IMG/VR virus record: IMGVR_UViG_3300028393_000019
Span: 1-64,000 of that record
DNA length: 64,000 nt
Direction: 5' to 3' (one strand)
Both the position numbers and the translations under genes were made by a program. Below the pieces are notes generated by a model. The model did not search any database. It had not been told where the DNA came from and was given only the letters and a program-made list of their open reading frames with translations. Shown here piece by piece: positions 28,575-48,879 of the stretch (the stretch's first letter is position 1; every line of letters begins with the position of its first letter).

Positions 28575-28584
28575 GTGAGATATT

Positions 28585-29352: not shown

Positions 29353-29364
29353 TAAGGGAATAAC

Positions 29365-30216: not shown

Positions 30217-30227
30217 TAGAGGCATAT

Positions 30228-31091: not shown

Positions 31092-31101
31092 AAGGTAAAT
31101 T

Positions 31102-31956: not shown

Positions 31957-31960
31957 CATT

Positions 31961-34169: not shown

Positions 34170-34953
34170 AACTCTGTTTGGGTGGATGCGTAGAGAATCA
34201 AAACCTTTTATTCGCTTTTACTCGCTAGAGCCAGGTACTGCAACTCTATTTCCTATTGTAAAATCATCATCTATCGATCGTAATTTTTTATCAAATATTC
34301 AACCGGGTGATCAACCAGAAACACTATCTTCAAAAAACTGCCCCGGCATTAAGAAGATTGTGTCAAGCGGTTGGATAGTACCTGCCCCAGCAGACTTTAC
34401 AATAAACACCAACGGTGACGGAATTAGTTTTGACTGGGCTCAACCGTATCGATTCAGTAAAATCACTCCTGGCATGGAAGCGTATGTCAACAGTCATACT
34501 CGCAGTCAAACGGAACCATTGCTCGATGACGAAACTTCTACATTGAAAACTGTAGTGAAAGTTGAAACTCCTTGGCGAATTGAAGCAAGTGACGATACAG
34601 TACTGTTACTAATGCCAGTGACATACAACAACGAAAGCAGATTCTCGGCAGCTACTGGAATATTAGATCCCAAATACGGACACGTTGTTAATATTCAATT
34701 ATTCTGGAAAGTGTTAAATGGAGCAACTACCGTAAAAGCAGGAACACCGTTGTGTCAAATTATTCCAATTTCAAGAAAAGCCTTGTCCGGATCGTTTTAT
34801 GATGTTACAATAGATACAGCTACTGATAATGACACTAAAAAAGAACACGAATTTAACTATGCATCAAACTGTGCATTTTTAGCAAATGATTCGCTGTCTT
34901 CAAGACTAAGCCGTGTAATAACTATTTTAAATAAGTACAAGACTAAAGGATAA
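34141..34953 (+). CDS. DUF6065/dUTPase-fold-like protein (start may be 34153)
   Basis: 'KNCPGI...GWIVPAPADF...KVETPWRI...GILD...VKAGTPLCQIIP'; paralogue of 47600..48430. Confidence 0.55.
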   Translation: MAEKMTTLCKTLFGWMRRESKPFIRFYSLEPGTATLFPIVKSSSIDRNFLSNIQPGDQPETLSSKNCPGIKKIVSSGWIVPAPADFTINTNGDGISFDWAQPYRFSKITPGMEAYVNSHTRSQTEPLLDDETSTLKTVVKVETPWRIEASDDTVLLLMPVTYNNESRFSAATGILDPKYGHVVNIQLFWKVLNGATTVKAGTPLCQIIPISRKALSGSFYDVTIDTATDNDTKKEHEFNYASNCAFLANDSLSSRLSRVITILNKYKTKG

Positions 34954-34956
34954 CCT

Positions 34957-35208
34957 ATGAACTACAAAGAACAACTTCAAACCATCATCGTAAAAATTAC
35001 CGAGCAAAAAGAAGGTGCTAGCGCAGAACTTGCTAAATTGGAAGAAGAGTTTGCTAACGTGAAATTAAATCCGTATGGCATCACAGCCATTGATTTTGCT
35101 AAACGTCAAGAACTCAGCACAGATGTTCTAAAAATGGAAGGCGTACTCATGGGTTTACAACTTGCATTAGAAACATTTGACGGAGCTCAGCAAGGTGATC
35201 CAGCTTAA
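34957..35208 (+). CDS. small helical/coiled-coil hypothetical protein
   Basis: 83 aa, SD AAAGGA, heptad-like E/K/L pattern. Confidence 0.6.
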   Translation: MNYKEQLQTIIVKITEQKEGASAELAKLEEEFANVKLNPYGITAIDFAKRQELSTDVLKMEGVLMGLQLALETFDGAQQGDPA

Positions 35209-35782
35209 GAATGGCGGCTTATTTTTATTTCCTCCAGATGTTTGGAAATTCAAGTACGATTTTAATTTTGAAGAATTAAAACCAAAGATAGATCATTTGT
35301 TGAACATTACTGAGAATAACTCAGAACTTGAATCAGGCGATGCTCTATCTACTGTTGCATTGGACGAAAGTATGCAACCACATTCGTGGGCGGAGTTGGC
35401 ACATTTTCAAAACTGGTTAGGAGAAAAAATTGCTCTTATCCGGAGAGAAAATGCATTCAACTACACACGTTCTGAAGTATCCAGATCATGGGTCAATCGT
35501 CACGGGTTTGGCGGCGAAACAATTGAACACAATCATAATCAAACTACATTCGTAGTAACATGTTATCTTCAGTTACCACCTGATTCGGGATTTATTGAAT
35601 TCAAAGACCCGCTGGAATATCATAAAACTCTTTACCCTATAATTCCTGAAGAAAGTTCTTATCAGGCAGTGCCTTGCGAAACTAATGATGTATTGATATT
35701 TCCTGGATATATGCGTCATAGAGTGCAACAAAATAAAAACAAGACCGACGAACGACTTGTTCTAACGCTCAATATCAAATGA
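35177..35782 (+). CDS. Fe(II)/2OG oxygenase, TIGR02466-like
   Basis: SWVN...EHNH, LIFPGYMRHRV, terminal R.VLT.N; exact start uncertain (TTG). Confidence 0.8.
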   Translation: MTELSKVIQLKNGGLFLFPPDVWKFKYDFNFEELKPKIDHLLNITENNSELESGDALSTVALDESMQPHSWAELAHFQNWLGEKIALIRRENAFNYTRSEVSRSWVNRHGFGGETIEHNHNQTTFVVTCYLQLPPDSGFIEFKDPLEYHKTLYPIIPEESSYQAVPCETNDVLIFPGYMRHRVQQNKNKTDERLVLTLNIK

Positions 35783-36576
35783 GAGAATTCAAAGTTTGCT
35801 ATCCTGATGCCAACAACATCAATAAAGTTCTTAAACTCAAACCCATTAAGGACTTCAATGTCAAGTATGTAAAACTTGACAAGGAAATCGGGTATTGGGT
35901 GTCGGATCACCCGTTTATTGACAACGGTTTTGATATCTTTAGAGAATTAATAGCTTCATTTCCTATACAGAAAGACAATAATCATCCTGATAATATGGAT
36001 CCCAACCCATTTGATACCATACATGTACCCGAGTGGGTCAGTGGAAATATTGTCTCAGTGGTTGAAGAATTTTATCGCATGAGCAACACAAAAACTATCT
36101 TTGTACCGCAACTGCATGAATGGGGTAATGTTTATTTCAAAGCAAAAGCCCGCCCCATAACCTGCTGGCGAATTCCACATATTGATTATATACATGGCTT
36201 GGTTGCAAATTTATGGTTTACAGATCATGATATTACAGACAGCGGAACCAAATTGTATCACTACACCGGCAAGATGTATAACGAAATTTACGACTTTCAG
36301 CAAGATACTGATCATCCAAGATACAAAGAATGGCAACAGTTGGCTGACAAACCTACTCGCGCAGATGCTTGGTTTAATATTCCCGATGAAGAATTACGAA
36401 CTTGGGGATTTGAATGTGTAGGCATTGCCCCAACCAAAGAAGGCACAATGACCTGGTACAATTCAAATGTTTGCCACCTTGCATATATTTCTGAAAAAGT
36501 AGATTTTAGATGGAGTCATACATTTGCATTTAGCCATGAAACACACCCTAGTACTATGGGAGATTTGTTTAGATGA
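35779..36576 (+). CDS. Fe(II)/2OG oxygenase-like (DUF6445-like)
   Basis: RIPHID (HxD), SGTKLY, distal 'YNSNVCHLA', RWS. Confidence 0.65.
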   Translation: MREFKVCYPDANNINKVLKLKPIKDFNVKYVKLDKEIGYWVSDHPFIDNGFDIFRELIASFPIQKDNNHPDNMDPNPFDTIHVPEWVSGNIVSVVEEFYRMSNTKTIFVPQLHEWGNVYFKAKARPITCWRIPHIDYIHGLVANLWFTDHDITDSGTKLYHYTGKMYNEIYDFQQDTDHPRYKEWQQLADKPTRADAWFNIPDEELRTWGFECVGIAPTKEGTMTWYNSNVCHLAYISEKVDFRWSHTFAFSHETHPSTMGDLFR

Positions 36577-37196
36577 ACTATGATTTATATTTTCCAACTC
36601 CCATATGGTGGGAGGATACCAATTTTGATACCGAAGACATGCTTAAACTATGTTATTCAGTAAAAGAACAAGATCCTATTGGAAGAAAATTAAGCAATGA
36701 CGGTGGCTGGCAAAGCAAAGACTTTAGGCCTGGAAAATACCCCGAGCTAAAAGTCTTAGAAGATAGAATAATGGCGCAGGCACAGCAATGTATACGTGAT
36801 TTTGGATTTGATGAAAATTCATGTTTTCCTGTGTTAGAGAATATATGGCTCAATGTCAACGGCAAGCACAATTCCAACATGGTCCATATGCATGATGCAT
36901 CGTTTGTGTCGGGCGTATTTTACCTAAAGGCTCGCCCCGGGCAGGGTAAAATTACCATGTATAAAAATATGATGCAAGATTTTGCCACAATGTCATTTGC
37001 AAATTTAGAAAAATTTACTCAGATCAGCGCATCTGCAATCAGCTATGATCCATTTACTAGTAGGTTGATCATGTTCCCGGGATGGTTGCCTCACGGAGTA
37101 TCTGCTAACGAGTTAGACGAAGATCGAGTTTCACTTTCATTTAATGTAAAAATAATTAGGACCGACGATGAACGCTATAGGCCAACGATTAGTTAA
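36573..37196 (+). CDS. Fe(II)/2OG oxygenase, TIGR02466-like
   Basis: YFPTPIW, GGWQS, WLNVN..HNSNMVHMH, VSGVFYL, MFPGWLPHGV, RVSLSFN. Confidence 0.88.
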   Translation: MNYDLYFPTPIWWEDTNFDTEDMLKLCYSVKEQDPIGRKLSNDGGWQSKDFRPGKYPELKVLEDRIMAQAQQCIRDFGFDENSCFPVLENIWLNVNGKHNSNMVHMHDASFVSGVFYLKARPGQGKITMYKNMMQDFATMSFANLEKFTQISASAISYDPFTSRLIMFPGWLPHGVSANELDEDRVSLSFNVKIIRTDDERYRPTIS

Positions 37197-37893
37197 CGAG
37201 ACCAATCTTCTATACGAGGATAAACCGCATTATTTTAAAAACTTATTACCAGGTGTAAAAGAAATGCTGACCTGGGCTGATGTTGAAAAATGTGCTAACA
37301 ACCCTGCCCTTTATAATTTTGAAATGATTGGTAAAGATAATATCAAAATTGAAATTCCAATGCATAAAAAAGCATGGGTATTTTCTAAACCAGTGCAGGA
37401 TAAGGCATTTATAGTGGATCATATCAACAAAGGCAACGGTTTTGTCATCATGGACTATGGGTTTTACAGTGAAAAGACCAATGAACTACTAAAAATACTT
37501 GAAACAATCTATGATGTAAATGGTGCTATCCACGTGTATGGCGGACTTGCTGATGCAAAGTCATTCTGGATACACGAGGATTATCCGTCTAACTTTATTT
37601 TTCAAGCAGAAGGTAAAACTAGATGGAAAGTGTACAACAATCGGATTTCTGCCATGTATAGAACTGGCACAATGAATCATAAATTAAAACATCAAGACCT
37701 TGACTTGGCATTCGATGTGGTACTTGAACCAGGTGATGCAATATACATACCATCCAGAGCATACCACATTGCAGAACCAATGGGACAGCGATTGAGTATG
37801 AGTGTTCCGTGTTGGACTAGATTGCCTACAGATGATCCCCGCGAAATGAATGACAGAAACAATTATAGGATTAACTATGACAGAAATATTTAA
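37168..37893 (+). CDS. JmjC/cupin-4 (ROXA/YcfD-like) oxygenase
   Basis: SFWIHED..NFIFQAEGKTRWKVY and LEPGDAIYIPSRAYHIA. Confidence 0.82.
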   Translation: MNAIGQRLVNETNLLYEDKPHYFKNLLPGVKEMLTWADVEKCANNPALYNFEMIGKDNIKIEIPMHKKAWVFSKPVQDKAFIVDHINKGNGFVIMDYGFYSEKTNELLKILETIYDVNGAIHVYGGLADAKSFWIHEDYPSNFIFQAEGKTRWKVYNNRISAMYRTGTMNHKLKHQDLDLAFDVVLEPGDAIYIPSRAYHIAEPMGQRLSMSVPCWTRLPTDDPREMNDRNNYRINYDRNI

Positions 37894-38464
37894 ACCAAGG
37901 GAGTACTCGGGGGGTGTGAATTTTGACTATCAGAAAGCCATGTATGCTTATCTAACTGATATCAAGTTTGACTGGCATTACATGGAAGATACTACCACTG
38001 AAAAAACCAATCTTCCACAATATTCTACCCCAGCATTTGGAAATTTATTATACTATTCACAGCACGAATCAAATCCGCACTACGAATTTTTTAAACCGCT
38101 GATTGAAGCATTGGAACAAACCGCTGGATTTAAAATTAAAAAACTGCTGAGAATGCGAGCTGGTATGTTGCTCAACACCAAATATGTACTGCCAGGTATG
38201 CCTTACAAATATAATACGCCTCACATAGATTATGATATTGATCATTATACAGTAGTGTATTATGTGAACGAGTGTGACGGTGATACTGTGGTATTTCGTG
38301 AAATTGCTCCTGCTGAAAAATACTATAGCCTGCACAAGTGTACCCCACACCAAGGAAAGTTCTTGTTGTTTAACGGGCGGCATTATCATGCAAGTACCTG
38401 TCCCAAAGTGTACACCAAGCGTATTGCTATCACAATCAATTTTACTGCTGATATAGATGGATAA
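37877..38464 (+). CDS. Fe(II)/2OG oxygenase
   Basis: PHIDYD, YYVNECDGDT, FNGRHYHAS, RIAITINF; ATG 37877 has SD AGGA, preferred over 37850. Confidence 0.8.
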   Translation: MTEIFKPREYSGGVNFDYQKAMYAYLTDIKFDWHYMEDTTTEKTNLPQYSTPAFGNLLYYSQHESNPHYEFFKPLIEALEQTAGFKIKKLLRMRAGMLLNTKYVLPGMPYKYNTPHIDYDIDHYTVVYYVNECDGDTVVFREIAPAEKYYSLHKCTPHQGKFLLFNGRHYHASTCPKVYTKRIAITINFTADIDG

Positions 38465-39164
38465 TTTGTTTTTAAATAAATTCATAAACACCAAAAACTT
38501 GAGTAGTTCAGAGTTTATTAAATCTCACGACATTAAAAATCGGTTCCTGTATCCATATATGCCGACCATTGTGATTGATAATTTCTATAACGATCCTAAT
38601 TTATGGAGAGAATTTGCGTTAGATCAAAAGTTTTTCAAAGGTGATCGGGGTAACTGGCCCGGCTTGAGAACTGAATTGTTGCATAAACTACACTATGATC
38701 TATTTAAAATCACGTTGAAAAAAATATTATTTGTTTTAAAAGATTACGGAATTACTCAAGTGGTCGAACTACAAACAGGATTCCAACTGATAGCTGAAGA
38801 GTATGGGCGCGGCTGGGTGCATGATGATGATCCATCGTTTCAATATGCAGGCATCATATATCTAAGCAAGGACGCTCCAATTGGTTCCGGCACTACAATA
38901 TATGAAGACTCTGTGGACTTTGACGGAGATGTATATAACAAAATGTTTGAAACAGATGTTAACAATGCCTCTGCAGAAGATCGAGAAATATATGCAAAAT
39001 ACAGAGCAGAACAAGTGTCAAAATTTAAAAAAAGTATAGTGGTAGAAAATGTATACAATCGCTTTGTATTGTTTGATTCGCGTTGTTGGCACAGTGCTGA
39101 TAATTTTTTTGGTAGCACACCGGACGATACTAGATTAACGCAGGTATTTTTTATCAAACAATGA
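38457..39164 (+). CDS. Fe(II)/2OG oxygenase (DUF6445-like)
   Basis: IVIDNFY.DP, WPGLRT, GWVHDD, AGIIYL, SGTTIY, YNRFVLFDSRCWHSA..FG, RLTQVFF. Confidence 0.78.
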   Translation: MDNLFLNKFINTKNLSSSEFIKSHDIKNRFLYPYMPTIVIDNFYNDPNLWREFALDQKFFKGDRGNWPGLRTELLHKLHYDLFKITLKKILFVLKDYGITQVVELQTGFQLIAEEYGRGWVHDDDPSFQYAGIIYLSKDAPIGSGTTIYEDSVDFDGDVYNKMFETDVNNASAEDREIYAKYRAEQVSKFKKSIVVENVYNRFVLFDSRCWHSADNFFGSTPDDTRLTQVFFIKQ

Positions 39165-39772
39165 AAACATTAAAACAACCAATCAAGGTTATTGATAACT
39201 TTTTTGAAGCTCCTGATTTATGGCAACACTATGCCCTGAAGCAACAGTTTGCTCGAGACAACAACTCAACTTGGCCCGGAACTCGAACTACTACACTGGA
39301 TCAATTGGATATGGAACTGTTTAATTCCGTTGCATCTACTCTCATTAGTCATACACACGGTAAACAGTTCTTTTCTCTCTTAAAGATAAACTTTGCATCT
39401 GTTGACAGCAGTTATAATATTGGATGGATGCACCAAGACGAGCCGCAGTACAATGTTGCTGGCGTCATATTCTTGAATAAATTTGCTCCTGCCAATACTG
39501 GATTATCGTTTTACACAAAGGTTGCAGATAATAATCAAGACTACAACAGTTTGTTCTTTGAAGAATTAAAAGCTGATCCAGCCGATCGATCAGCGTTCGT
39601 TAAATTTAAAGAAGAACAACGTAGATTGTTCAAGCGGAATATGACTGTTGAAAATATTTTTAATAGATGTGTGATGTTTCCACCGGAACAATTCCATGCG
39701 GCTGACGGATACTTTGGCAATACACTAGATGATGCTAGATTAACAATTAATTTTTTTGGAATTTCAATATGA
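39161..39772 (+). CDS. Fe(II)/2OG oxygenase (DUF6445-like), tandem paralogue of 38457
   Basis: VIDNFFEAP, WPGTRT, GWMHQD, AGVIFL, FNRCVMF...FHAA.GYFG, RLTINFF. Confidence 0.78.
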   Translation: MKTLKQPIKVIDNFFEAPDLWQHYALKQQFARDNNSTWPGTRTTTLDQLDMELFNSVASTLISHTHGKQFFSLLKINFASVDSSYNIGWMHQDEPQYNVAGVIFLNKFAPANTGLSFYTKVADNNQDYNSLFFEELKADPADRSAFVKFKEEQRRLFKRNMTVENIFNRCVMFPPEQFHAADGYFGNTLDDARLTINFFGISI

Positions 39773-40383
39773 CATCGGCTTTTGGTCACTTTAGTAATTT
39801 TGGGTTTGTTAGAGATACAGTGCCACCAGAACTGCTCGATGAATTACAAACAGAAATCGATTCAATCGATTTAACAGAACCAATAAAAGATAAACTGGCA
39901 GGCAATTTAGAGACTTCATACGTTCTTGAAAAATCAAGAACTAATTTGGAAAAGTTTGTATTGGGGTTGGCAAACGCATACTCTGCTGGGTTCGATGCAA
40001 CTCAGACTGGTAAAAATCTCACAGGGGATAATTTATCTTTAAGATTGTTTTGGGTAAATTTTCAAAGAAAACACGAGTTCAATCCTATACACATGCACGA
40101 TGGTGATTTCAGCTTTGTGATATGGTTAAAAGTTCCGTATAAACTTGCCGATGAAGTGAATATGCCCCGGGCCAAAAATTCTAATATGCCTCGAGGTGGT
40201 ATGTTTAGTTTTTTCTATACTAATATATTTGGTGAAATTCGAGAAGCTGAATTTCCTATAGACAAGTTATGGGAAGGGCAAATATTGCTATTCCCAGCAT
40301 GTTTACAACACATGGTATATCCATTTGCATCAACGGATGATGTGCGTATATCAATTTCAGGGAACATAAAAAGAAATGAATGA
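39769..40383 (+). CDS. Fe(II)/2OG oxygenase, TIGR02466-like
   Basis: WVNFQRKHEFNPIHMHDGDFSFVIWL, LFPACLQHMVYPF, RISISGN. Confidence 0.82.
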   Translation: MTSAFGHFSNFGFVRDTVPPELLDELQTEIDSIDLTEPIKDKLAGNLETSYVLEKSRTNLEKFVLGLANAYSAGFDATQTGKNLTGDNLSLRLFWVNFQRKHEFNPIHMHDGDFSFVIWLKVPYKLADEVNMPRAKNSNMPRGGMFSFFYTNIFGEIREAEFPIDKLWEGQILLFPACLQHMVYPFASTDDVRISISGNIKRNE

Positions 40384-40984
40384 CATTATAGAAGTTGACA
40401 ATATTATCCCGCTTGATTATCAGAATCATTTACTTGATACATTCACAGGCTGGGAATTTCCATGGGTCCTTAATAAGAATATGGTGTCGGGCGACGAGTG
40501 TTTTAAGAACATGTCAAACAATCCTCCGGGATTTAATCACTTCTTTTACGAAAAAAGTGCGCCAGTGAGTAATTTCTTTCAACTGGTGTACCCGCTAGTA
40601 TTAAGTATAACCAGTCAAGCAAAGGTACCCTTTAACAGACTATACAGAATGCGAGCCAATTTGACACTGGCAAATCAAAAATCGGACTCTGATATGTTGA
40701 TGCCGCACATTGACAGTTTCCACCCGCACTGGAATGCAATTTACTATGTGAATGACAGCGACGGAGATACTATTATTTTTAACGAAACCAATGACGAGTT
40801 TGATCCGGGGCAAAAAGATATAGACAAAATTAAAAATGGTGAATTTACAATCAAACATAGAATTACTCCCAAGAAGGGTAAACTGATTGCGTTCCCAGGC
40901 AAATATTATCATACTGCAAGTTTCTGTAAAGAAGCAGACTATAGATGTTTAATCAATATTAACTTGGGAAATTTATTTGTATGA
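40376..40984 (+). CDS. Fe(II)/2OG oxygenase, paralogue of 37877
   Basis: PHIDS, YYVNDSDGDT, FPGKYYHTAS, RCLININ. Confidence 0.8.
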   Translation: MNDIIEVDNIIPLDYQNHLLDTFTGWEFPWVLNKNMVSGDECFKNMSNNPPGFNHFFYEKSAPVSNFFQLVYPLVLSITSQAKVPFNRLYRMRANLTLANQKSDSDMLMPHIDSFHPHWNAIYYVNDSDGDTIIFNETNDEFDPGQKDIDKIKNGEFTIKHRITPKKGKLIAFPGKYYHTASFCKEADYRCLININLGNLFV

Positions 40985-41523
40985 CAGACTACACACTATA
41001 TCAGTCAGAATTTATTGCCAACAATCAAGATTTAATATTTGAAGATATCAATCGTGCCCACGATTTATTTAGAGAAGTATTTCCTAATCAAGACTCAACT
41101 TGGACTTATCACAAGTATAATATATTTGCGCTAACTGCGCCGTCAACAGCATTTTATCAAATATACACAGAATTGAGAAACTTGGTCAGATCACAGTTGG
41201 GTAACGATAGGCCATTGTGGTTTCAAGCATGGATCAATTACCATCAACAATCCGAATTGTTAAAATGGCACGGGCACGAGTTTGATTATCACGGGTATAT
41301 TGCAATTGACCCCAAGAATACCAAGACAGTATTTGAAGGGTATGAAATTGTAAACAAACCAGGACAGATTTACTTTGGTCCAGGCTGGAGAGAACATATG
41401 GTGGAAGCAATCTCACCATTTCAAGGAGTTAGAACTACAATTGGGTTTGATATATTTACAACTCCGGATAACCGCCATGTAGCCCACCCTTACACCAATA
41501 TGAGTCTAATGCCATTGCTATGA
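40981..41523 (+). CDS. putative Fe(II)/2OG oxygenase
   Basis: AWINY...LKWHGH, HGYI, distal EHMV, RTTIGFD. Confidence 0.65.
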   Translation: MTDYTLYQSEFIANNQDLIFEDINRAHDLFREVFPNQDSTWTYHKYNIFALTAPSTAFYQIYTELRNLVRSQLGNDRPLWFQAWINYHQQSELLKWHGHEFDYHGYIAIDPKNTKTVFEGYEIVNKPGQIYFGPGWREHMVEAISPFQGVRTTIGFDIFTTPDNRHVAHPYTNMSLMPLL

Positions 41524-42158
41524 AACAAGATTACTATATTATCAAAAATGCTATCAGCAAAGAACTGGCTGAATTTATTGCTCTTGAGTTTAGCATGATG
41601 GAAACTACTTGCAAGCATTTGTATCCCGATGCTGATTTGTCAGATTTATGTAAAGGCACATTCGCTCGTTACAGTCCGCTAATGGTAGAAGCATTGTCAG
41701 TATCACTACAGCCCAAGATTGAACAAGCAGTTGGAATGAAATTGTTGCCAACATACTCTTATGCACGTATCTACTACAAAGACACTGATTTAAAATCCCA
41801 TTTTGATCGTGCAAGTTCTGAAGTCACAGTTAGCGTGTGCCTACAACAAACAGCCACATGGCCCTTGTATGTAAAAAATGCCGAAGGAGTAATCCACGCA
41901 ATCAATTTGGAAGTGGGCGATGCTGGAATTTATTGCGGCCGCAAGCACGAACACTGGCGAGAACCTTTACAAGAAGAAGGTCAGCATGTTCAAGCATTTT
42001 TACAATACGTTGACGCTGAAGGTGACGATGCCTGGCTTAAATGGGATACTCGACCCTGTTTAGGGTTACCTTTTGAGTATGCCAGCCAGGCAATACAATC
42101 AGAATTAAGTCACATTAAGAATGTTAAAAACTTAATGGATTCTGTTGGTAAACTGTAA
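41520..42158 (+). CDS. Fe(II)/2OG oxygenase
   Basis: PTYSYARIY...HFDRASSEVTVSVCL, GDAGIYCG..HEHWRE, QAFLQY. Confidence 0.8.
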   Translation: MKQDYYIIKNAISKELAEFIALEFSMMETTCKHLYPDADLSDLCKGTFARYSPLMVEALSVSLQPKIEQAVGMKLLPTYSYARIYYKDTDLKSHFDRASSEVTVSVCLQQTATWPLYVKNAEGVIHAINLEVGDAGIYCGRKHEHWREPLQEEGQHVQAFLQYVDAEGDDAWLKWDTRPCLGLPFEYASQAIQSELSHIKNVKNLMDSVGKL

Positions 42159-42374
42159 TCAAGCGGGTTTGCTGTTAATAAACACAGCACCTTCTGGAAC
42201 TTTGGATTCTTCAACTTTCAAAGGGCCAGCCACGTGCCAACGTGGTCCGTCGACATCATTGAATATCACACCTGCTTCGTTACGTGTGTTTGCATAACAA
42301 TACTTTTCAATGGTATGTAATGCTGATGTGTTTGGGTTATCACCATCTCTTAAAATTACTTTGTAAATGTTCAT
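42159..42374 (-). CDS. small hypothetical protein
   Basis: 71 aa with strong SD (AGGAG) and its own TAAATA upstream on the minus strand. Confidence 0.65.
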   Translation of the reverse strand: MNIYKVILRDGDNPNTSALHTIEKYCYANTRNEAGVIFNDVDGPRWHVAGPLKVEESKVPEGAVFINSKPA

Positions 42375-42396: not shown

Positions 42397-42402
42397 TATT
42401 TA
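42397..42402 (-). promoter_or_regulatory. late promoter core (CTAAATA)
   Basis: Overlaps the stop of the 514-aa halogenase, upstream of the SD of the 71-aa gene. Confidence 0.45.
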
Positions 42403-43944
42403 GTTTGTTTTATCCAGCCATTCTTCAATGGTCCAAAATGGCTCAACAAGAATCTTGTACTTGTCTCTGTTGATATTTAGTACTTTTTCTCCTACCTTGA
42501 GAAACTTTTCATTTGTTTTTGCTAAATTGGTGTGATCAAATACAGACAGCCCCTGCAACACCATGAGCCAAGCACTTGCAGAATATCCGTGACAATACGG
42601 TTCAGGGCGATCGCTGTTAAAATATTCTCCCCAAGCAGTTAATTTTTCCTTTAAACTTGGAGGAATACGAAATTCGTCATATGCATGACTTTTCCAGAAG
42701 TCAGTGTCTCTACGTTGCCCTCTATAATGCAATGCTAGAAAGTCTCTAATATCTTCGGTAATATACCATATGCGATCGTTGAATCTCTTAATTGTTTCAG
42801 TGGGATGGTTGGCTTCGTAAGGGCTCCAATAGTCCTGTAAACCAAACAAACTTTCAACAATAACTGCAATTCCGTTAGCTTCAAGCGGTTCTAAAAAGCC
42901 ACTACTGAGTCCTATAGCAACAACATTGTTTTTCCAAGCGTTGCGCATCATGCCAGGGTCGAACTGAAAATTAGCAATTGGTTCTATCTTTTTATTGAAT
43001 CGTAATTCAGCTTCCTGCACTGCTTGATCAAGTGTTATATGATCCGGATCATAAATGTATCCGTTGCCAGACCTGTTGCGAATATTGATGTTCCAACTCC
43101 AACCGTATTTCATAGCAGTGGCATTGGTAGTCACACACGGACAAGTTTCATCCCACCATGCCACAACTGCTCTGGATGGAAAATAACTGGTGGCATCAAC
43201 AATTGGTTCTTTCAGTTGTTTACCCAACAGTAATCTTGCAAATCCTGAGCAATCAAAAAACCAGTCACCTTCTGCAACACGCCCATTGGTTAGTGTTATA
43301 CTGGTAACGTCACCGTTGAGATCCTGCATGGTCTGCTGGAACTCGCCTTCTAATAAAGTGATACCCCGTTCCAGTCCTATTTTTTTAAGATAGGCAGCGG
43401 TGCTTCTGCTTTCAAAATGCCACATGGGCACACATGGAATATCAGAGGCAGCTCCAAACGGTACTTTGTTCTCTTTGATAAAATAATTGGCATAGAATGC
43501 GTCTGCTGTAGGAATACGGTTTGCCAATATGGTACGCATGTATCTATCCTTGGCGCTCTCGGCATTCATGAGGGACATCAAAGTTCCCACAGTCAATTCA
43601 TCTCGATTTTCTGCAAAATAATCAGTCCAACCGTTGAGATATGGTGCATAATCAGTTTGAAGTGAGTGAATAAATTCTGTGCCTACTCCATTCCAGTCAG
43701 TGAACTTGCCACCCAACTTGGGTGTGGCATTAACCTGTCGAATAAAATCATTTATATCAATTCGTAAATGTTTTAATAATGTTACAAATGTAGTATTACC
43801 GCTTTCGCCTGCAATAATAGGCGGCTGATTAGGATTCTCAATAACAGTAACTTGTGCCCTGTGCCAATTGCGTTGGACGAACAGGGCAGTTAACCATCCT
43901 GCTGTACCGCCTCCTAATACAACAACTTTAGAATTTGTATACAT
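42400..43944 (-). CDS. flavin-dependent halogenase family protein (divergent)
   Basis: GGGTAG, IIAGESG, NATPKLGGKF, FFDCSGF, GWSWNIN, FLEPLEANG. Confidence 0.88.
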   Translation of the reverse strand: MYTNSKVVVLGGGTAGWLTALFVQRNWHRAQVTVIENPNQPPIIAGESGNTTFVTLLKHLRIDINDFIRQVNATPKLGGKFTDWNGVGTEFIHSLQTDYAPYLNGWTDYFAENRDELTVGTLMSLMNAESAKDRYMRTILANRIPTADAFYANYFIKENKVPFGAASDIPCVPMWHFESRSTAAYLKKIGLERGITLLEGEFQQTMQDLNGDVTSITLTNGRVAEGDWFFDCSGFARLLLGKQLKEPIVDATSYFPSRAVVAWWDETCPCVTTNATAMKYGWSWNINIRNRSGNGYIYDPDHITLDQAVQEAELRFNKKIEPIANFQFDPGMMRNAWKNNVVAIGLSSGFLEPLEANGIAVIVESLFGLQDYWSPYEANHPTETIKRFNDRIWYITEDIRDFLALHYRGQRRDTDFWKSHAYDEFRIPPSLKEKLTAWGEYFNSDRPEPYCHGYSASAWLMVLQGLSVFDHTNLAKTNEKFLKVGEKVLNINRDKYKILVEPFWTIEEWLDKTN

Positions 43945-45433
43945 GTGGGTTTGCTCGTTGTTTAATTATTTCTAGTGCTTGTCTATGTGAATAGAACGTG
44001 TCATTTTCATCACTTAGCTTGGTGGCTTTCATAAATTCATCAGTGTCTGCTGAGTGTGCTAACATATGAGCTTCATACTTGTCTCGAATACTTGTATTAT
44101 CAAACATACCCAGACCATGCATAACTTGACCATAATTTAAATATGAAAACAGTATCATGGGATGATTAAACAGATTAATGTTTGGATATCCTTTCTTGAA
44201 ATAGTCTAAGTATTTTGCGTTAAATTCTGTAGGTACAATTTCATTTTTGCACCAACGCCAGAACTCACTGTTGTCACGTTTGGTAAAATAATGTAGTTGT
44301 ATAAAGTCTATAATATTTTCTGAAATAGTTTTCATATGTTTGTTATAGCGTTCGGCAGTTAGTTCTTCACCTCGTTCATAAAAGAACAAATCAGGTAGCA
44401 TCATAGATGCTTGCTGTATAGTAGTGCCAATACTGCTAGCTTCGAGCGGCTCGACAAATATACCGCTTAACCCAACCATAACACAATTTTTAATCCAGTA
44501 GTTTTCTACATAGCCTGCACTAAATTTAACCTTCTTACCAATAGTAAGTGTCTGATCAATGCCAAGATTATTTTTATAATGTTGTGAAACTTCATCAAAC
44601 GCATGGGTCTCATTCATAAACTCATCGCAGAATACATAGCCATTGCCGTAACGCTCTTGCGTGGGTATGCGCCACACCCATCCACTGCTTAGGGCCGTTG
44701 CTTCCGTGTAGGAAGGTATAACTTCAGTGTAATCTGTTGGAAATGCAATAGCACTGTTCATAGGCAACTGCTTGGAACAGTCAACCCATTTAGCACCTAA
44801 CTTGCTGCCAATAATTCTTTTGAATCCACTACAGTCAATATAAAACTCATATGCATGATGTGTACCGGTTACGTCAACTAGTTCTTTAACATACCCATCT
44901 TCATCAAGAATGACATCTTCAACTTCAGTGTCTATAACTGTAATTTTTCTTTCTTTACACACTCTATGTAAGAAGTCATTGAGTTTATTAGTGTCAAAGT
45001 GATATTGACTTAATATATCATGTACCGGCTCAATATGCAGACCGTCTTGCGCCTTGCGCCACACGGTATCTAACGGATCCCAATCTTCACCAATCATACG
45101 CAACCAAGTAAATGGAAGTCCGTGTACTTTCGACACAGAACCATACTGCTCTGATAAACTATGGAAATAACTTTTGCCATCACCGTTCCAGTCAGTAAAC
45201 TTAATACCTATTTTAAATGTAGCACCAGTTTCTCGAACTAACGAAAAAATATCAATATCCACGTGCCGCATAAACACACGCCAGTGCTCAGTTGATCCTT
45301 CGCCTACCCCGATAATACCTATCTTTGAACTTTCAATCATGGTGATTTTAATCTCTGGCCATGCTTTGCGTAGCATCAATGCGGTGACTAGGCCGCTAGT
45401 TCCGCCACCGAGTATACAAACTGAATTGATCAT
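43928..45433 (-). CDS. flavin-dependent halogenase family protein
   Basis: GGGTSG, IGVGEGS, GATFKIGIKF, YIDCSGF, GWVWRIP, FVEPLEASS. Confidence 0.9.
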   Translation of the reverse strand: MINSVCILGGGTSGLVTALMLRKAWPEIKITMIESSKIGIIGVGEGSTEHWRVFMRHVDIDIFSLVRETGATFKIGIKFTDWNGDGKSYFHSLSEQYGSVSKVHGLPFTWLRMIGEDWDPLDTVWRKAQDGLHIEPVHDILSQYHFDTNKLNDFLHRVCKERKITVIDTEVEDVILDEDGYVKELVDVTGTHHAYEFYIDCSGFKRIIGSKLGAKWVDCSKQLPMNSAIAFPTDYTEVIPSYTEATALSSGWVWRIPTQERYGNGYVFCDEFMNETHAFDEVSQHYKNNLGIDQTLTIGKKVKFSAGYVENYWIKNCVMVGLSGIFVEPLEASSIGTTIQQASMMLPDLFFYERGEELTAERYNKHMKTISENIIDFIQLHYFTKRDNSEFWRWCKNEIVPTEFNAKYLDYFKKGYPNINLFNHPMILFSYLNYGQVMHGLGMFDNTSIRDKYEAHMLAHSADTDEFMKATKLSDENDTFYSHRQALEIIKQRANPHVYKF

Positions 45434-46932
45434 AATGCGTATTCTATTCCTTTTAATCGCTGTTTAACAAGGGCAATAGCATCCTTGTGTTTCATCCACC
45501 CATCTGTAGTAGAACTATGCATTTGTTTAATGTTGCTTTCACACCGCTCTCTATATTTTGCTCCGTATTGTGCATCGTATAACTGTTTAATTTTAGCAGT
45601 ATCAAACATTCTTAGCCCATGCATAACTTGTGTCCAGTTTAAACAATCATAAATTCTAAACAACGACATTAAACCGTCTTCTGGTAATACTATTTGATTA
45701 ATAAAATTTGTTTTAAAATTTTCTATGTTAGCTTTATTAAACTCTGTCATCTTTATATCATGTTTACACCAGCGCCAGAACTCTGTATCTTCTCGCTGTG
45801 TGAAATAGTGTAGCTGAATAAAGTCTAACACGTTTAGCATCATATCGTCAAATACTCTATTATACTCGTTAATTGTTGCAGAGTCATTACGATGCCAGTT
45901 CCATAATCCAGCAACTAATAATCTTGATTGTTGAATAGTAGTTGAGATACTGCTAGCTTCAAGGGGCTCTACAAAGTTACTGCTAAGACCAATACTTACA
46001 CAGTTCTTGATCCATGCCTTGTTTACTCTTCCTGATACAAAGTTAATCTTTCTGCCAATATTAATAGTGTCTTTAAAATGTGTTTGTATTTCTGCGATCG
46101 CTTGATCTTCAGTAATAAATTGATCGCTGAATACGTATCCATTACCAAAGCGCCCCTGTACCGGACTGCGCCAGTGCCATCCACTGTCCATGGCTTTCGA
46201 TAATGTGTATACTGGTATGTCATCTTGATCAGTAGTTTGAAAGGCTACTGCACTGTTCATTGGTAAATGAGCCGACCAGTCAACCCACGTAGCACCAAGT
46301 TTGGATGCAATTACTCGTCTAAATCCGCTACTGTCAATAAAGAAGTCTGCAGAGTAGTGTTGATTATCAGAGCTAACAATTGATTTGACAAAACCAGCAT
46401 CGTCTAAAACACAGTCTACAACTTCAGCTTCAACTATAGATATACCTCGTCCAGTACATAATTTTTCTAAGTATGCATTTAATTTTTCACTGTCAAAGTG
46501 AAACTGATAGTAATCAGTTAACGGTTCCGCCACCATGTTGTCTTCAAGGATCATCTTCCAGTGCATATCCTCAGCTTTTATACCGTCACCTATTATTCGC
46601 ATCATAGAGTATGCCGCGCCAGTATGTGGATCCATTCCGACATATCCTTCGGGTAAACTATGAAAATAGCTAGTACCGTCACCGTGCCAATTTTCAAACT
46701 TAATACCTGTTTTAATAGTCGCACCGCAATGCTCAATTAATTCTATAAAACTAATACCAACTGCATTAGCAAATCGTGTCCAGTGTTCAGTAGATCCCTC
46801 TCCGACACCTATGGTTCCAATTTTGCTGGATTTGACCAAGGTAATATCAAGGTGCGGAATAGATGCCTTGAGGTACAGTGCATTCATTAAACCAGCGTTG
46901 CCGCCACCTAGTACACAAATTGAGTTTATCAT
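45430..46932 (-). CDS. flavin-dependent halogenase family protein
   Basis: Start set at MINSICVLGGGNAG (46932) by alignment to its neighbour MINSVCILGGG; GATIKTGIKF, FIDSSGF, GWHWRSP, FVEPLEASS. Confidence 0.9.
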   Translation of the reverse strand: MINSICVLGGGNAGLMNALYLKASIPHLDITLVKSSKIGTIGVGEGSTEHWTRFANAVGISFIELIEHCGATIKTGIKFENWHGDGTSYFHSLPEGYVGMDPHTGAAYSMMRIIGDGIKAEDMHWKMILEDNMVAEPLTDYYQFHFDSEKLNAYLEKLCTGRGISIVEAEVVDCVLDDAGFVKSIVSSDNQHYSADFFIDSSGFRRVIASKLGATWVDWSAHLPMNSAVAFQTTDQDDIPVYTLSKAMDSGWHWRSPVQGRFGNGYVFSDQFITEDQAIAEIQTHFKDTINIGRKINFVSGRVNKAWIKNCVSIGLSSNFVEPLEASSISTTIQQSRLLVAGLWNWHRNDSATINEYNRVFDDMMLNVLDFIQLHYFTQREDTEFWRWCKHDIKMTEFNKANIENFKTNFINQIVLPEDGLMSLFRIYDCLNWTQVMHGLRMFDTAKIKQLYDAQYGAKYRERCESNIKQMHSSTTDGWMKHKDAIALVKQRLKGIEYAL

Positions 46933-47012
46933 AACCAGTTCTTCTCGAAGTTTTTTTGTAGTGTAATATATATCATTGTACACGCAGATGTTCTGCAGAC
47001 CTGAAAGGAACT

Positions 47013-47603
47013 ATGTCCGAAAAGCAACTATGGCCTTTGTTTTCAAAGCCAATTTTTAAAACACACTTAGACGTTTCTAAAGTGGACTTGTCTAATATCA
47101 AATGGGCAAGGAACTATCAAAACTGGATTAGCGAATCTCAAAAAGTGCTTGACGATCCTGTATTAACTGACTTTGCCAATCAGATTTCAGATAACCTTGT
47201 GGAATACTTTTACGGAATCATGGGTGCAAATCCAAATGTAAAGATGTATGTTACTGAAAGTTGGTTTAACAAAACAGAAAAAGGACAAAGTCATCATAGA
47301 CATTGGCATCCTAACAGTATCTTATCAGGTGTAGTTTATCTTGACAGCGAAGGCGACAGCGGCCGCATTAAATTTATTACCAGCCAGTATGACACAATTG
47401 AATACAATATTGTTGAGTCTAACTTGTATAATTCACGTAGTTGGTCAGTAGTTCCGGAAGCTGGTACTATGCTAATATTCCCCAGTAATGTAGAGCACAT
47501 GGTTGAAGAGTACATTGGCGACAAACCGCGATTTAGTCTGTCGTTTAACACATTTATCAGCGGTGACATCAACGTAGATCCGTTGACTCGACTTAAAATT
47601 TAA
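47013..47603 (+). CDS. Fe(II)/2OG oxygenase, TIGR02466-like
   Basis: LFSKPI, SWFN...SHHRHWHPNSILSGVVYL, LIFPSNVEHMV, RFSLSFN; SD AAAGGA. Confidence 0.88.
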   Translation: MSEKQLWPLFSKPIFKTHLDVSKVDLSNIKWARNYQNWISESQKVLDDPVLTDFANQISDNLVEYFYGIMGANPNVKMYVTESWFNKTEKGQSHHRHWHPNSILSGVVYLDSEGDSGRIKFITSQYDTIEYNIVESNLYNSRSWSVVPEAGTMLIFPSNVEHMVEEYIGDKPRFSLSFNTFISGDINVDPLTRLKI

Positions 47604-48430
47604 ATTTTATTCTTGGGATATTTGTTTCTAAAATAGCGAAACAGGTCAGTAATAATCCTGATTTTGTTACCCACTGTATCTGTCTTAGGGAATCGGCTGT
47701 GATTTGAAAACACATAAGCATCCTCTATTTCACGATCGACGTCGTCTGCACTATCAACTATAAATTCTATATTGTTACTGTTCAGTAACTCTCTGCTGAT
47801 CGGTACATACTGTACAAGCGGTGTGCCTGCTTTGACAAGAACTTCGCCTTCAATTATATGCCAAAATAGTTGTACACTGATTGCATGCATGTAGCGTGGA
47901 TCAACAATGCCAATAGCCGCAGTAAAGCGTTCTTCATTGGTATAAGTCACTGGAATTTGTAGGAATACAATATCGTCACTGGCTTTGACACGCCATGGCG
48001 TTTCCACTTTAACCCCACTATGATGATACTGTTTTTCGCTGTGCGGGCATTCTCGAGGTATTAACGGTTCAACCTGCGGAGGACTGTGCCAGCTGATGTA
48101 ATAATCAGTGCCGCCAAATGTATATTTGTTGCTGTGACGTTTGAATGAAAATGGATGCTCCCAGGATATATCTGTAGGGCCCTTGCCTGTTTTGATAATA
48201 AAATCAGCCGGCGCACAAATCACATAGCCCGCTCGATTAATTTGTTTTATCGCCGGACAATTTAGTACAGTTTGATTGCCTTGTTCAGGACGATTGCGAT
48301 CAAGATTACCTAATCCGTTCCAGTCGCGCTCAACAAGTGTATTTTTTATAACTGGATAAATGGTTGATACATTTTGATCAAGGGAATAAAATCTTACCCA
48401 GCTTTTTTTCTTTTTAAACCAATCAAACAT
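47600..48430 (-). CDS. DUF6065/dUTPase-fold-like protein, paralogue of 34141
   Basis: WVRFYSL, LNCPAI...GYVICAPADF, KVETPWRV, GIVD, VKAGTPLVQYVP. Confidence 0.55.
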   Translation of the reverse strand: MFDWFKKKKSWVRFYSLDQNVSTIYPVIKNTLVERDWNGLGNLDRNRPEQGNQTVLNCPAIKQINRAGYVICAPADFIIKTGKGPTDISWEHPFSFKRHSNKYTFGGTDYYISWHSPPQVEPLIPRECPHSEKQYHHSGVKVETPWRVKASDDIVFLQIPVTYTNEERFTAAIGIVDPRYMHAISVQLFWHIIEGEVLVKAGTPLVQYVPISRELLNSNNIEFIVDSADDVDREIEDAYVFSNHSRFPKTDTVGNKIRIITDLFRYFRNKYPKNKI

Positions 48431-48879
48431 TAGATTAACTCCACTAGATCGAAGACAGTTTGTAATTTTGTGCGAATAGTTTTGCTTGAAAAACTATTAC
48501 GGAGTCCTTGATGCAAAGGTTTTGGAGAACGATCCATTGTAGCCCATGCCCAACCTTGATGTTCATCACTTAGCACAGGTACAAATTCTGCGTCAACTAC
48601 ACACAGGTAAGTGTGAAAGTTGAATACACGATCGTTTGATACAAATGTTTCTAGCGGAATAGTTTTTATTATGCTGGGGTGACTACCAATTTCTTCGGTA
48701 ATTTCACGCTGTAGACCCTGCCAAGGCGTTTCGCCTGTGACATTGGTACCGCCCACTAGGCCCCAAGTACCTTCATGCTTACCTGTAGCTTTTTGTAGCA
48801 GTAGAAAACGTCTCGTAGATTTGGCATAAAACAATGCTCCGCTACAGACTATTTGTTCTTTTACAATATGATTTTCCAT
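48430..48879 (-). CDS. NUDIX hydrolase
   Basis: Nudix box GGTNVTGETPWQGLQREITEEIG; LSDEHQGWAW. Confidence 0.88.
   Translation of the reverse strand: MENHIVKEQIVCSGALFYAKSTRRFLLLQKATGKHEGTWGLVGGTNVTGETPWQGLQREITEEIGSHPSIIKTIPLETFVSNDRVFNFHTYLCVVDAEFVPVLSDEHQGWAWATMDRSPKPLHQGLRNSFSSKTIRTKLQTVFDLVELI

What the first reader, a model, noticed from the sequence alone, without database searches (positions are those of the whole stretch)
42400..46932. Halogenase paralogues keep the catalytic Lys but diverge at the halide-site and WxWxIP motifs
Seen: only the 32553 enzyme has canonical WxWxIP plus EPLESTG. The three tandem minus-strand enzymes read WSWNIN/EPLEANG, WVWRIP/EPLEASS and WHWRSP/EPLEASS, and all keep the ATxK lysine. 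Known: in PrnA-type enzymes the Thr-Gly after EPLES forms the halide site, and WxWxIP is thought to block monooxygenase chemistry. Inference: the paralogues may differ in halide preference (Br/I, as reported for a cyanophage enzyme), in substrate, or may be non-halogenating flavin oxidases.
Basis: partly seen in the sequence, partly recalled or inferred. Interest (0 to 1): 0.65.

Follow-up and report, generated by a model that had tools for sequence, protein, structure and literature searches.

The report
Conserved phage halogenase set, altered motifs
A large marine T4-like phage carries a fixed set of four to five old, distinct flavin-dependent halogenase genes; three of them have altered "signature" motifs that are conserved across hundreds of related phage genes, so they mark untested enzyme lineages, not decay and not a proven change of halide.

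Summary
The three tandem minus-strand ORFs read WSWNIN/EPLEANG, WVWRIP/EPLEASS and WHWRSP/EPLEASS. The 32553 ORF reads WVWNIP/EPLESTG. All four keep the catalytic Lys and Glu. A fifth copy lies outside the window and reads WRFKIG/EPLEANA.

The copies are old paralogues (28-47% identical), not recent duplicates. Each variant motif is fixed across its own clade of about 90-120 metagenomic phage proteins, down to about 45-50% identity. The trio keeps its gene order in 70 of 80 viral loci, within a known type of neighbourhood: a dioxygenase array plus halogenases, as in Syn9.

The canonical copy is the VirX1 type, and VirX1 is the iodide-preferring enzyme. So iodide preference does not require these motif changes. 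The halide is held by backbone amides, and in the bromide-preferring BrvH the Gly-to-Ser exchange there did not explain its preference. A Ser-to-Ala mutant of the same motif position in CHEESY1 stayed active.

Most likely all copies are working halogenases specialised for different substrates or positions in one phage pathway. A halide-preference difference is unsupported but not excluded. Loss of halogenation is unlikely, because Lys, Glu and both Trp are invariant. Interest is moderate: these are uncharacterised viral FDH clades that motif-based mining would miss.

The parts
42400..43944 (-). Clade-1 flavin-dependent halogenase homologue (P0001, 514 aa): GGGTAG, ATPK, WSWNIN, EPLEANG
   Evidence: PF04820 E 3.2e-89. 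The motifs are fixed in 120 relatives, and Lys76, Trp282, Trp284 and Glu355 are invariant. AF2 pLDDT is 90.7. Best Foldseek hits are BrvH and Xcc4156. No cultured-phage relative exceeds 30% identity.
43928..45433 (-). Clade-2 halogenase homologue (P0002, 501 aa): ATFK, WVWRIP (canonical), EPLEASS. It overlaps the next gene by 17 nt.
   Evidence: PF04820 E 1.7e-100. EPLEASS or EPLEATS occurs in 119 of 119 relatives. It is sister to clade 3 on the tree.
45430..46935 (-). Clade-3 halogenase homologue (P0003 from Met17, 501 aa): ATIK, WHWRSP, EPLEASS. It shares a 4-nt overlap with the clade-2 gene.
   Evidence: PF04820 E 1.8e-103. WxWRSP occurs in about 76 of 86 relatives. Lys, both Trp, Pro and E-P-L-E-A-S are invariant. 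AF2 pLDDT is 90.1, with TM 0.83-0.87 to PyrH, Thal and PrnA.
32553..34169 (+). VirX1-type halogenase (P0004, 538 aa) with canonical WVWNIP and EPLESTG
   Evidence: The VirX1 chain 6qgm matches at E 2.9e-193 over residues 2-532. Identity is 52.6% to the Syn9/Syn10 gene and 62.8% to S-CREM1.
34141..34953 (+). Gp43-like protein of unknown function (phrog_7084), coupled to the VirX1-type gene
   Evidence: phrog_7084 E 5.5e-52. The Atlas cluster is named 'Gp43 family', DUF6065. The gene is conserved beside the halogenase in L006-L008 and in Syn9.
47600..48430 (-). Second Gp43-like paralogue (phrog_7084), beside the trio
   Evidence: phrog_7084 E 7.4e-47. It is 38% identical to 34141-34953.
35177..42158 (+). 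Array of about 11 small dioxygenase-type genes (2OG-Fe(II) oxygenases, one JmjC, two DUF6445) lying between the halogenase genes
   Evidence: Pfam and PHROG matches. The same array is present in L006, L007 and L008.
47013..47603 (+). 2OG-Fe(II) oxygenase, divergently placed next to the trio
   Evidence: PF13759 E 2e-21. It is conserved at this place in L006-L008.
42159..42374 (-). 71-aa ORF directly downstream of the trio, function unknown
   Evidence: ORF list. A 71-75 aa gene is called at the same position in L006, L007 and L008. It has no PHROG match.

Best explanation
The window holds four members, and the genome a fifth, of a fixed set of anciently diverged phage-borne 'variant A' flavin-dependent halogenases. 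They belong to a conserved module with about a dozen dioxygenases and two Gp43-like proteins.

Inferred mechanism: each enzyme binds reduced flavin supplied by a reductase, forms hypohalous acid from O2 and a halide at the flavin, and passes it down the tunnel to the Lys/Glu pair, where an electron-rich carbon of the substrate is halogenated.

The deviations from WxWxIP and EPLESTG are lineage signatures under purifying selection. They sit on the tunnel and substrate side. The Ser next to the catalytic Glu is replaced by Ala, which is the usual state in phage halogenase homologues.

The deviations therefore most likely reflect specialisation of each paralogue for a different substrate, or a different position on a shared substrate, in one multi-step pathway. 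They probably do not reflect a different halide or loss of halogenation. None of the paralogues is a tryptophan halogenase in the strict sense.

Shown here: family membership, fold, conservation, synteny, and the VirX1 relationship. Inferred: activity, substrate differences, and pathway role.
For: 1. All copies match PF04820 far above the cut-off. GxGxxG, Lys and Glu are invariant across all five clades.
2. AF2 models are confident (pLDDT 90-91) and superpose on solved FDHs at TM 0.77-0.88.
3. Motif variants are fixed within clades down to 39-50% identity. This indicates selection, not drift.
4. Pairwise identity is 28-47%. On the tree, clades 2 and 3 are sisters and clade 1 sits on a long stem followed by short branches, the pattern of an old functional shift.
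5. The order c3-c2-c1 is kept in 70 of 80 IMG/VR loci, and 48 of these also hold the VirX1 type. The whole module is syntenic in contigs of 92-239 kb.
6. Ser-to-Ala is tolerated in an FDH: CHEESY1 S311A had only a moderate effect, and none on one substrate (PMC12645471).
7. The halide is bound by backbone amides (PMC5945002).
8. Iyer et al. 2010 (PMC2938197) described the Syn9 array of ten dioxygenases plus two halogenases and proposed successive halogenations and hydroxylations.
9. The segments that mark Trp-halogenases (ATFS.., HPFE., per PMC8269204) are absent. The paralogues read GSTEHW/HSLSE, GSTEHW/HSLPE, SGNTTF/HSLQT and STLGHI/YPFSA.
Against: - No enzyme of clades 1, 2, 3 or 5 has been assayed, and no substrate is known.
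[quoted passage not shown] It is also the 'S' of a motif said to occur in all active FDHs (PMC8407142).
- CHEESY1 belongs to a different (phenol) FDH clade, so its S311A result may not transfer.
- Some cultured-phage homologues (Syn1, S-PM2) have Gln for the catalytic Glu. This shows that phage lineages can move away from efficient halogenation.
- The AF2 models dip in confidence at the loop after EPLEA (10-residue block means 81 and 76), and I could not measure the geometry.
- No classical flavin reductase was found in the record.
Confidence: 0.58

Rival explanations
1. Halide-preference reading. The changes after EPLE (A-N-G, A-S-S, A-N-A instead of S-T-G) reshape the halide pocket, so the paralogues use different halides (Cl, Br, I).
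For: - The changed residues are exactly those whose amides hold the halide.
- The enzymes are marine, where Br and I chemistry is common.
- The closest solved relatives by Foldseek, BrvH and Xcc4156, include the bromide-preferring BrvH, which has STS instead of STG.
- Four enzymes with different halides would explain why all are retained.
Against: - Binding is through the backbone, and the BrvH authors found that the exchange does not alter the site or explain the preference.
- VirX1, with I > Br > Cl, has the fully canonical motifs.
- Thal forms HOI, HOBr and HOCl alike at the flavin, and the halide outcome is set by space in the substrate pocket.
Confidence: 0.17
2. Non-halogenating reading. 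The clades with broken WxWxIP (WSWNIN, WxWRSP, WxFKIG) let substrate reach the flavin and act as hydroxylases or oxidases, complementing the dioxygenases.
For: - WxWxIP is proposed to shield the flavin from substrate.
- The module is otherwise full of oxygenases.
- There is weak, sub-threshold similarity to the protein-Trp hydroxylases QhpG and LodB.
Against: - Both Trp are invariant in clades 1 and 3. Only the last one or two positions differ.
- The Lys and Glu used only for halogenation are invariant.
- The QhpG and LodB scores are 20-31 bits against cut-offs of 240-400, so they reflect generic Rossmann similarity.
- The role of individual WxWxIP residues is stated to be unclear.
Confidence: 0.1
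3. Protein- or peptide-substrate reading. The halogenases and dioxygenases modify phage proteins encoded next to them (the 3701-aa CBM_5_12 protein, the Gly-rich proteins, or small ORFs) rather than a small molecule.
For: - The module lies inside the structural region, between the giant CBM protein with Gly_rich_2 genes and gp15/gp13.
- Iyer et al. proposed fibre-like proteins as substrates of co-encoded dioxygenases in other neighbourhoods.
- BrvH's open site was compared to the peptide halogenase MibH.
Against: - There is no direct evidence.
- The small ORFs (71 and 83 aa) are not rich in Trp, Tyr or His.
- MibH is among the weakest PDB matches for all copies.
- In hypervariable phage regions, adjacency is weak evidence.
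Confidence: 0.12

Closest known systems
VirX1 (cyanophage Syn10 flavin-dependent halogenase, PDB 6QGM)
   Same: The 32553 ORF matches it end to end (E 2.9e-193; 52.6% identity to the Syn9/Syn10 gene). It has the same WVWNIP, EPLESTG and NATYK motifs and an adjacent gp43-like gene.
   Different: The three tandem genes are only weak matches (E 1e-35 to 1e-44). They differ from VirX1 in both motifs.
BrvH (6FRL), Xcc4156 (6Y1W) and the proteobacterial halogenase homologues linked to TonB and SapC genes
   Same: They are among the best sequence or fold matches for clades 1 and 2. They are annotated as tryptophan halogenases; BrvH does not accept tryptophan and its native substrate is unknown. Several paralogues often lie side by side with dioxygenases.
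   Different: Identity is only about 25-37%. The bacterial group keeps Ser (EPLESTS in 100 of 120) and WxWxIP (116 of 120), while the phage clades have Ala.
Cyanophage and pelagiphage 'tryptophan halogenase' gene cluster T4-GC 212 (P-SSM2, S-H38, S-SCSM2R, HTVC008M, Syn1, S-PM2)
   Same: They share the Ser-to-Ala state (EPLEASS or EPLEATS). They group with clades 1-3 on the tree.
   Different: Identity is 28-39%. All have canonical WxWxIP. They occur as single genes rather than a trio. Syn1 and S-PM2 have Gln for the catalytic Glu.
Syn9 dioxygenase-halogenase neighbourhood (Iyer, Abhiman, de Souza, Aravind 2010)
   Same: It has the same architecture: a tandem array of unrelated 2OG and JmjC dioxygenases, halogenases and a gp43-type protein.
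   Different: Here there are four halogenases in the module plus a fifth elsewhere, against two in Syn9. Three of them belong to clades not represented in cultured phages at more than 39% identity.
Pseudoalteromonas sp. L11 'L11-2' putative halogenase (PDB 9LU2)
   Same: It is the only solved chain seen with Ala at the Ser position (EPLEATG), and it has a broken WxWxIP (WIWDIA). It is the top PDB match of clade 2.
   Different: The match is distant (190 bits, E 6.6e-55). No paper on it was found in the library, so its activity is unknown to me.

Membership tests
Flavin-dependent halogenase, Trp_halogenase family (PF04820, 'variant A') | Profile match above Pfam's gathering score | tested here: met
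   300-353 bits against a cut-off of 21 for all four window genes. The fifth copy scores 311 bits.
Flavin-dependent halogenase, Trp_halogenase family (PF04820, 'variant A') | GxGxxG flavin-binding motif | tested here: met
   GGGTAG, GGGTSG, GGGNAG and GGGSSG. The motif is invariant in clades.
Flavin-dependent halogenase, Trp_halogenase family (PF04820, 'variant A') | Catalytic Lys (PrnA K79) and Glu (PrnA E346) | tested here: met
   Both align in all five paralogues and are invariant across clades.
Flavin-dependent halogenase, Trp_halogenase family (PF04820, 'variant A') | Strict WxWxIP motif | tested here: not met
   The motif is met by 32553 (WVWNIP) and 43928 (WVWRIP). It is not met by 42400 (WSWNIN), 45430 (WHWRSP) or the fifth copy (WRFKIG). 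Both Trp are kept in the window genes. The literature notes that the motif is absent in some active FDHs, such as Bmp5.
Flavin-dependent halogenase, Trp_halogenase family (PF04820, 'variant A') | Fx.Px.Sx.G motif (the Ser next to the catalytic Glu), said to occur in all active FDHs | tested here: not met
   Only the VirX1-type copy has the Ser. The three tandem genes and the fifth copy have Ala (FLEPLEANG, FVEPLEASS, FTEPLEANA). CHEESY1 S311A remained active.
Flavin-dependent halogenase, Trp_halogenase family (PF04820, 'variant A') | FDH fold (flavin box plus helical substrate module) | tested here: met
   AF2 pLDDT 90.7 and 90.1. Foldseek probability 1.00 and TM 0.77-0.88 to BrvH, PrnA, RebH, Thal and PyrH.
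Flavin-dependent halogenase, Trp_halogenase family (PF04820, 'variant A') | Halide-dependent halogenating activity with FADH2 and O2 | not testable with these tools
   This needs an enzyme assay.
Tryptophan 5-, 6- or 7-halogenases (PrnA, RebH, PyrH, Thal) | Trp-binding signature segments (ATFS.. after GVGE, HPFE[QR], C-terminal YYHG..) | tested here: not met
   The signatures are listed in PMC8269204. The paralogues read GSTEHW/HSLSE, GSTEHW/HSLPE, SGNTTF/HSLQT and STLGHI/YPFSA. This resembles the 'indole halogenase' group with unknown native substrates.
VirX1-type viral halogenase | Full-length close similarity to VirX1 with the same motifs | tested here: met
   This applies only to 32553-34169: E 2.9e-193 over 2-532. 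The tandem trio does not qualify.

The most novel reading that the evidence does not exclude
The four to five halogenase clades, the roughly dozen dioxygenases and the two Gp43-like proteins form one phage-encoded pathway. It would carry out several different, position- or halide-specific halogenations and hydroxylations on one substrate, either a metabolite made during infection or the phage's own fibre-like proteins encoded next door.

On this reading, the Ala-for-Ser, WxWxIN and WxFxIG signatures mark new mechanistic subclasses of flavin-dependent halogenase that current motif-based mining does not find.
Probability: 0.22. Interest if true: 0.75.

Novelty: new variant of a known kind. Interest (0 to 1): 0.45.

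Why it matters
[quoted passage not shown] Large, conserved viral clades are shown here that keep the catalytic Lys and Glu but lack the Ser of the third motif. Two of them also break WxWxIP, so such screens would miss them.

They sit beside an orthologue of the only characterised viral halogenase. That gives a natural four-enzyme comparison set for asking what the motif residues do. It also shows that a widespread group of big marine phages keeps an elaborate halogenation and hydroxylation module whose product is unknown.

Tried and rejected
- DNA searches of the phage collection with the trio (megablast) and with the gp15 region (blastn) found nothing.
- The VirX1 paper (PMC6875430) is not held. 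No paper on PDB 9LU2, 9LUQ or 'L11-2' was found, so I cannot say whether the one solved EPLEATG/WIWDIA enzyme is active.
- A search for S347 gave only a QM/MM set-up detail.
- NCBIfam gave only sub-threshold generic flavoprotein hits.
- Model coordinates are not exposed to scripts. I could not measure the halide loop, tunnel or pocket, nor compare the helical lid directly.
- No PF01613 or PF03358 flavin reductase and no psbA were found in the 265 kb record. The record is incomplete (CheckV 72%), so absence is not proven and the host is open.
- I considered and rejected recent tandem duplication (28-47% identity), pseudogenes (intact frames, invariant catalytic residues) and private or neutral changes (clade-wide fixation).
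- The large representative search, read mapping and complex prediction were not used because the claims did not need them.

Full report
**What is there**

The window is the first 64 kb of a 265,680-bp IMG/VR virus record (linear, CheckV completeness 72%). It is a T4-like myovirus: it has a gp15 tail-sheath stabiliser at 48861-50327, a virion structural protein at 50327-51784, and a NUDIX gene. No psbA was found in the record, so the host is open.

The finding's coordinates hold three minus-strand ORFs that overlap by 17 and 4 nt:
- 42400-43944
- 43928-45433
- 45430-46935 (the ORF finder extends this one to a GTG at 46983, but relatives are 494-501 aa)

A fourth halogenase gene lies at 32553-34169 on the plus strand. 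All four match PF04820 at E 3e-89 to 3e-105. A fifth copy lies at about 209.3-210.9 kb of the record.

**Check of the observation**

| Gene | Lys motif | WxWxIP position | After EPLE |
|---|---|---|---|
| 42400 | ATPK | WSWNIN | EPLEANG |
| 43928 | ATFK | WVWRIP | EPLEASS |
| 45430 | ATIK | WHWRSP | EPLEASS |
| 32553 | ATYK | WVWNIP | EPLESTG |
| fifth copy | AVHK | WRFKIG | EPLEANA |

WVWRIP in the 43928 gene is itself canonical.

**The copies are old lineages, not recent duplicates and not decay**

Pairwise identity is 28-35%, except 46.5% between the 43928 and 45430 genes. Word-index searches returned 86-120 cluster representatives for each tandem gene at about 45-90% identity. All were from metagenomes or uncultured viruses, on contigs up to 381 kb.

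Within each clade the variant motif is the fixed state:
- WSWNIN 103/120, EPLEANG 116/120, ATPK 108/120
- WxWRIP 117/119, EPLEASS or EPLEATS 119/119
- WxWRSP about 76/86, EPLEASS or EPLEASN 86/86

The fifth clade keeps WxF[KN]I[GA] and EP[LM]EANA down to 39% identity. In alignments of 50-55 members, the GxGxxG glycines, the Lys, both Trp and E-P-L-E are invariant. Lys and Glu are invariant across all five clades.

A maximum-likelihood tree (quick search, 82 rows, midpoint root for drawing only) shows the following:
- Clades 2 and 3 are sisters (support 99). The cultured phages S-SCSM2R, S-H38 and P-SSM2 are their next relatives.
- Clade 1 sits on a long stem (2.14) followed by short internal branches.
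- Clade 5 and the VirX1-type gene fall on the side of the bacterial BrvH-like group.
- The VirX1-type branch is long, so its placement is unsure.

**Genomic context**

In 80 IMG/VR loci that hold a clade-1 gene, 70 have clade 3, clade 2 and clade 1 in the same order and orientation. Of these, 48 also have the VirX1 type on the opposite strand within 10 kb.

Contigs of 92 kb, 19 kb and 239 kb show the same full layout:
- gp13, a structural gene, gp15 and NUDIX
- a Gp43-like gene and a 2OG oxygenase
- the halogenase trio and a 71-75 aa ORF
- an array of about 11 dioxygenase-type genes
- an 83-aa ORF and a second Gp43-like gene
- one or two more halogenases

A 111-kb contig shows a variant of this layout beside a 4325-aa CBM_5_12 protein and Gly-rich proteins. 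The window has the same upstream genes: a 3701-aa ORF with four CBM_5_12 stretches and three Gly_rich_2 proteins.

This type of neighbourhood is already described. Iyer et al. 2010 reported ten tandem dioxygenases, two tryptophan halogenases and a novel Cys-containing protein in phage Syn9, and proposed successive halogenations and hydroxylations (PMC2938197).

**Comparison with characterised enzymes**

The canonical 32553 gene is the VirX1 type. PDB 6QGM matches at E 2.9e-193 over residues 2-532 with identical WVWNIP, EPLESTG and NATYK. Identity is 52.6% to the Syn9/Syn10 gene and 62.8% to S-CREM1. VirX1 is the viral enzyme with I > Br > Cl preference (PMC8407142).

The tandem genes are roughly equidistant (about 25-30% identity) from all solved FDHs. 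The motif after EPLE in these solved enzymes reads as follows:

| Enzyme | Residues after EPLE |
|---|---|
| PrnA, RebH, PyrH, LooH, VirX1 | E-S-T-G |
| Thal | E-S-S-G |
| BrvH, 9LUQ | E-S-T-S |
| 9LU2 (unpublished) | E-A-T-G, with WIWDIA |

In 120 halogenase ORFs from the 80 closest bacterial loci (Caulobacterales, Sphingomonadales, Alteromonadales, Xanthomonadales; 37% identity or less), EPLESTS occurs 100 times, any EPLEA 8 times, and WxWxIP 116 times.

Cultured phage homologues carry Ala as well. S-SCSM2R has EPLEASS. S-H38, P-SSM2 and HTVC008M have EPLEATS. Syn1 and S-PM2 have EPLQATS, with Gln for the catalytic Glu.

Ala at the Ser position is thus the usual state of phage homologues outside the VirX1 type. 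It is rare in their bacterial relatives and absent from characterised enzymes. The WxWxIN, WxWxSP and WxFxIG forms are specific to clades 1, 3 and 5.

**What the changed residues are known to do**

- The halide is coordinated by the backbone amides of the two residues after Ser (T359 and G360 in RebH, T351 and S352 in BrvH). The BrvH authors state that the Gly-to-Ser exchange does not alter the site and gives no clue to bromide preference (PMC5945002).
- Thal forms HOCl, HOBr and HOI at the flavin. Iodination fails only for lack of space at the substrate site. VirX1's iodination is attributed to a missing helical lid (PMC7948982).
[quoted passage not shown] It is the 'S' of the Fx.Px.Sx.G motif said to occur in all active FDHs.
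- In CHEESY1 the S311A mutant had only a moderate effect, and none on one substrate, while S311I was dead (PMC12645471).
- WxWxIP is proposed to shield the flavin from substrate, but the role of its individual residues is stated to be unclear (PMC10696468). Some active FDHs lack the motif.

**Structure**

AF2 models built on clade alignments are confident: P0001 has pLDDT 90.7 and P0003 has 90.1. They match solved FDHs at probability 1.00 and TM 0.77-0.88. BrvH and Xcc4156 rank first for clade 1, and PyrH, Thal and PrnA rank first for clade 3.

Confidence dips modestly in the 10-residue block that holds or follows EPLEA (81 and 76).

The short segments that mark true tryptophan halogenases (PMC8269204) are absent from all copies.

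**Interpretation**

The evidence fits working halogenases that diverged long ago and are kept together because each does a different job. Most plausibly they act on different substrates, or on different positions, in a pathway shared with the dioxygenases.

The halide-preference idea cannot be excluded, but it has no support from what is known of the site. It is also weakened because the iodinase type is the canonical copy. Loss of halogenation is unlikely, given the invariant Lys, Glu and Trp pair. A protein or peptide substrate, such as the neighbouring fibre-like proteins, is an open and attractive possibility without direct evidence.

A reduced-flavin source was not found among classical reductase families. 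A nitroreductase-family ORF 8 kb from the fifth copy is a lead. Otherwise the host would supply FADH2.

**Novelty and score**

Halogenases in cyanophages, VirX1 and the dioxygenase-halogenase neighbourhood are all known. New here:
- The set consists of five distinct conserved clades.
- Three of them, in the window, carry fixed deviations in motifs used as diagnostics.
- The trio is a syntenic unit in many uncultured large marine phages.
- Clade 1 has no cultured-phage relative above 30% identity.

I rate it a new variant of a known kind, with moderate interest (0.45).

Noticed in passing
window 34141-34953 (+) and 47600-48430 (-): Two paralogues (38% identical) of an unknown protein (phrog_7084; Atlas 'Gp43 family', DUF6065) flank the two halogenase groups and are conserved there in related contigs. 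Syn9 gp43 sits next to its halogenases too. [quoted passage not shown] 2010, and a candidate partner of the halogenases.
   Followed up: partly
G000:C1:209300-210868 (L004:1498-3066), outside the window: A fifth halogenase paralogue reads WRFKIG (second Trp replaced by Phe, Pro by Gly) and EPLEANA, with Lys kept. The signature is conserved in 15 viral loci down to 39% identity. A 206-aa ORF follows it, overlapping its 3' end; I did not scan it against any family library.
   Followed up: partly
G000:C1:201213-201911 (L198:314-1012): A 232-aa nitroreductase-family ORF (PF00881, 31.7 bits against a cut-off of 23.5) lies 8 kb from the fifth halogenase. It could be a phage-borne NAD(P)H:flavin reductase. 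It has no NCBIfam match.
   Followed up: partly
L036 (Syn1) and L037 (S-PM2) halogenase genes: These cultured cyanophage 'tryptophan halogenases' read EPLQATS: the catalytic Glu is replaced by Gln. That substitution should strongly impair a PrnA-type enzyme.
   Followed up: no
window 17130-28235 (+) and 28254-32455 (+): A 3701-aa ORF with four CBM_5_12 stretches is followed by a 106-aa tail-fibre-like ORF, four 255-287 aa paralogues (three match Gly_rich_2) and a 164-aa ORF. This block is conserved next to the halogenase module in a 111-kb contig.
   Followed up: partly
window 35177-42158 (+): About eleven back-to-back small genes, mostly overlapping by a few bases, belong to several unrelated dioxygenase families (2OG-FeII_Oxy_5, 2OG-FeII_Oxy_3, JmjC_2, DUF6445 x2, and phrog_2954, which is labelled 'ferrochelatase').
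   Followed up: partly
whole record G000: No psbA (PF00124) was found in 265 kb of a T4-like phage whose halogenase relatives are mostly cyanophage genes. Related contigs reach 240-380 kb. The host and the true genome size are open.
   Followed up: no
window 42159-42374 (-) and 34957-35208 (+): Two small conserved ORFs (71 and 83 aa) lie inside the module. They have no family match and are not rich in aromatic residues.
   Followed up: partly
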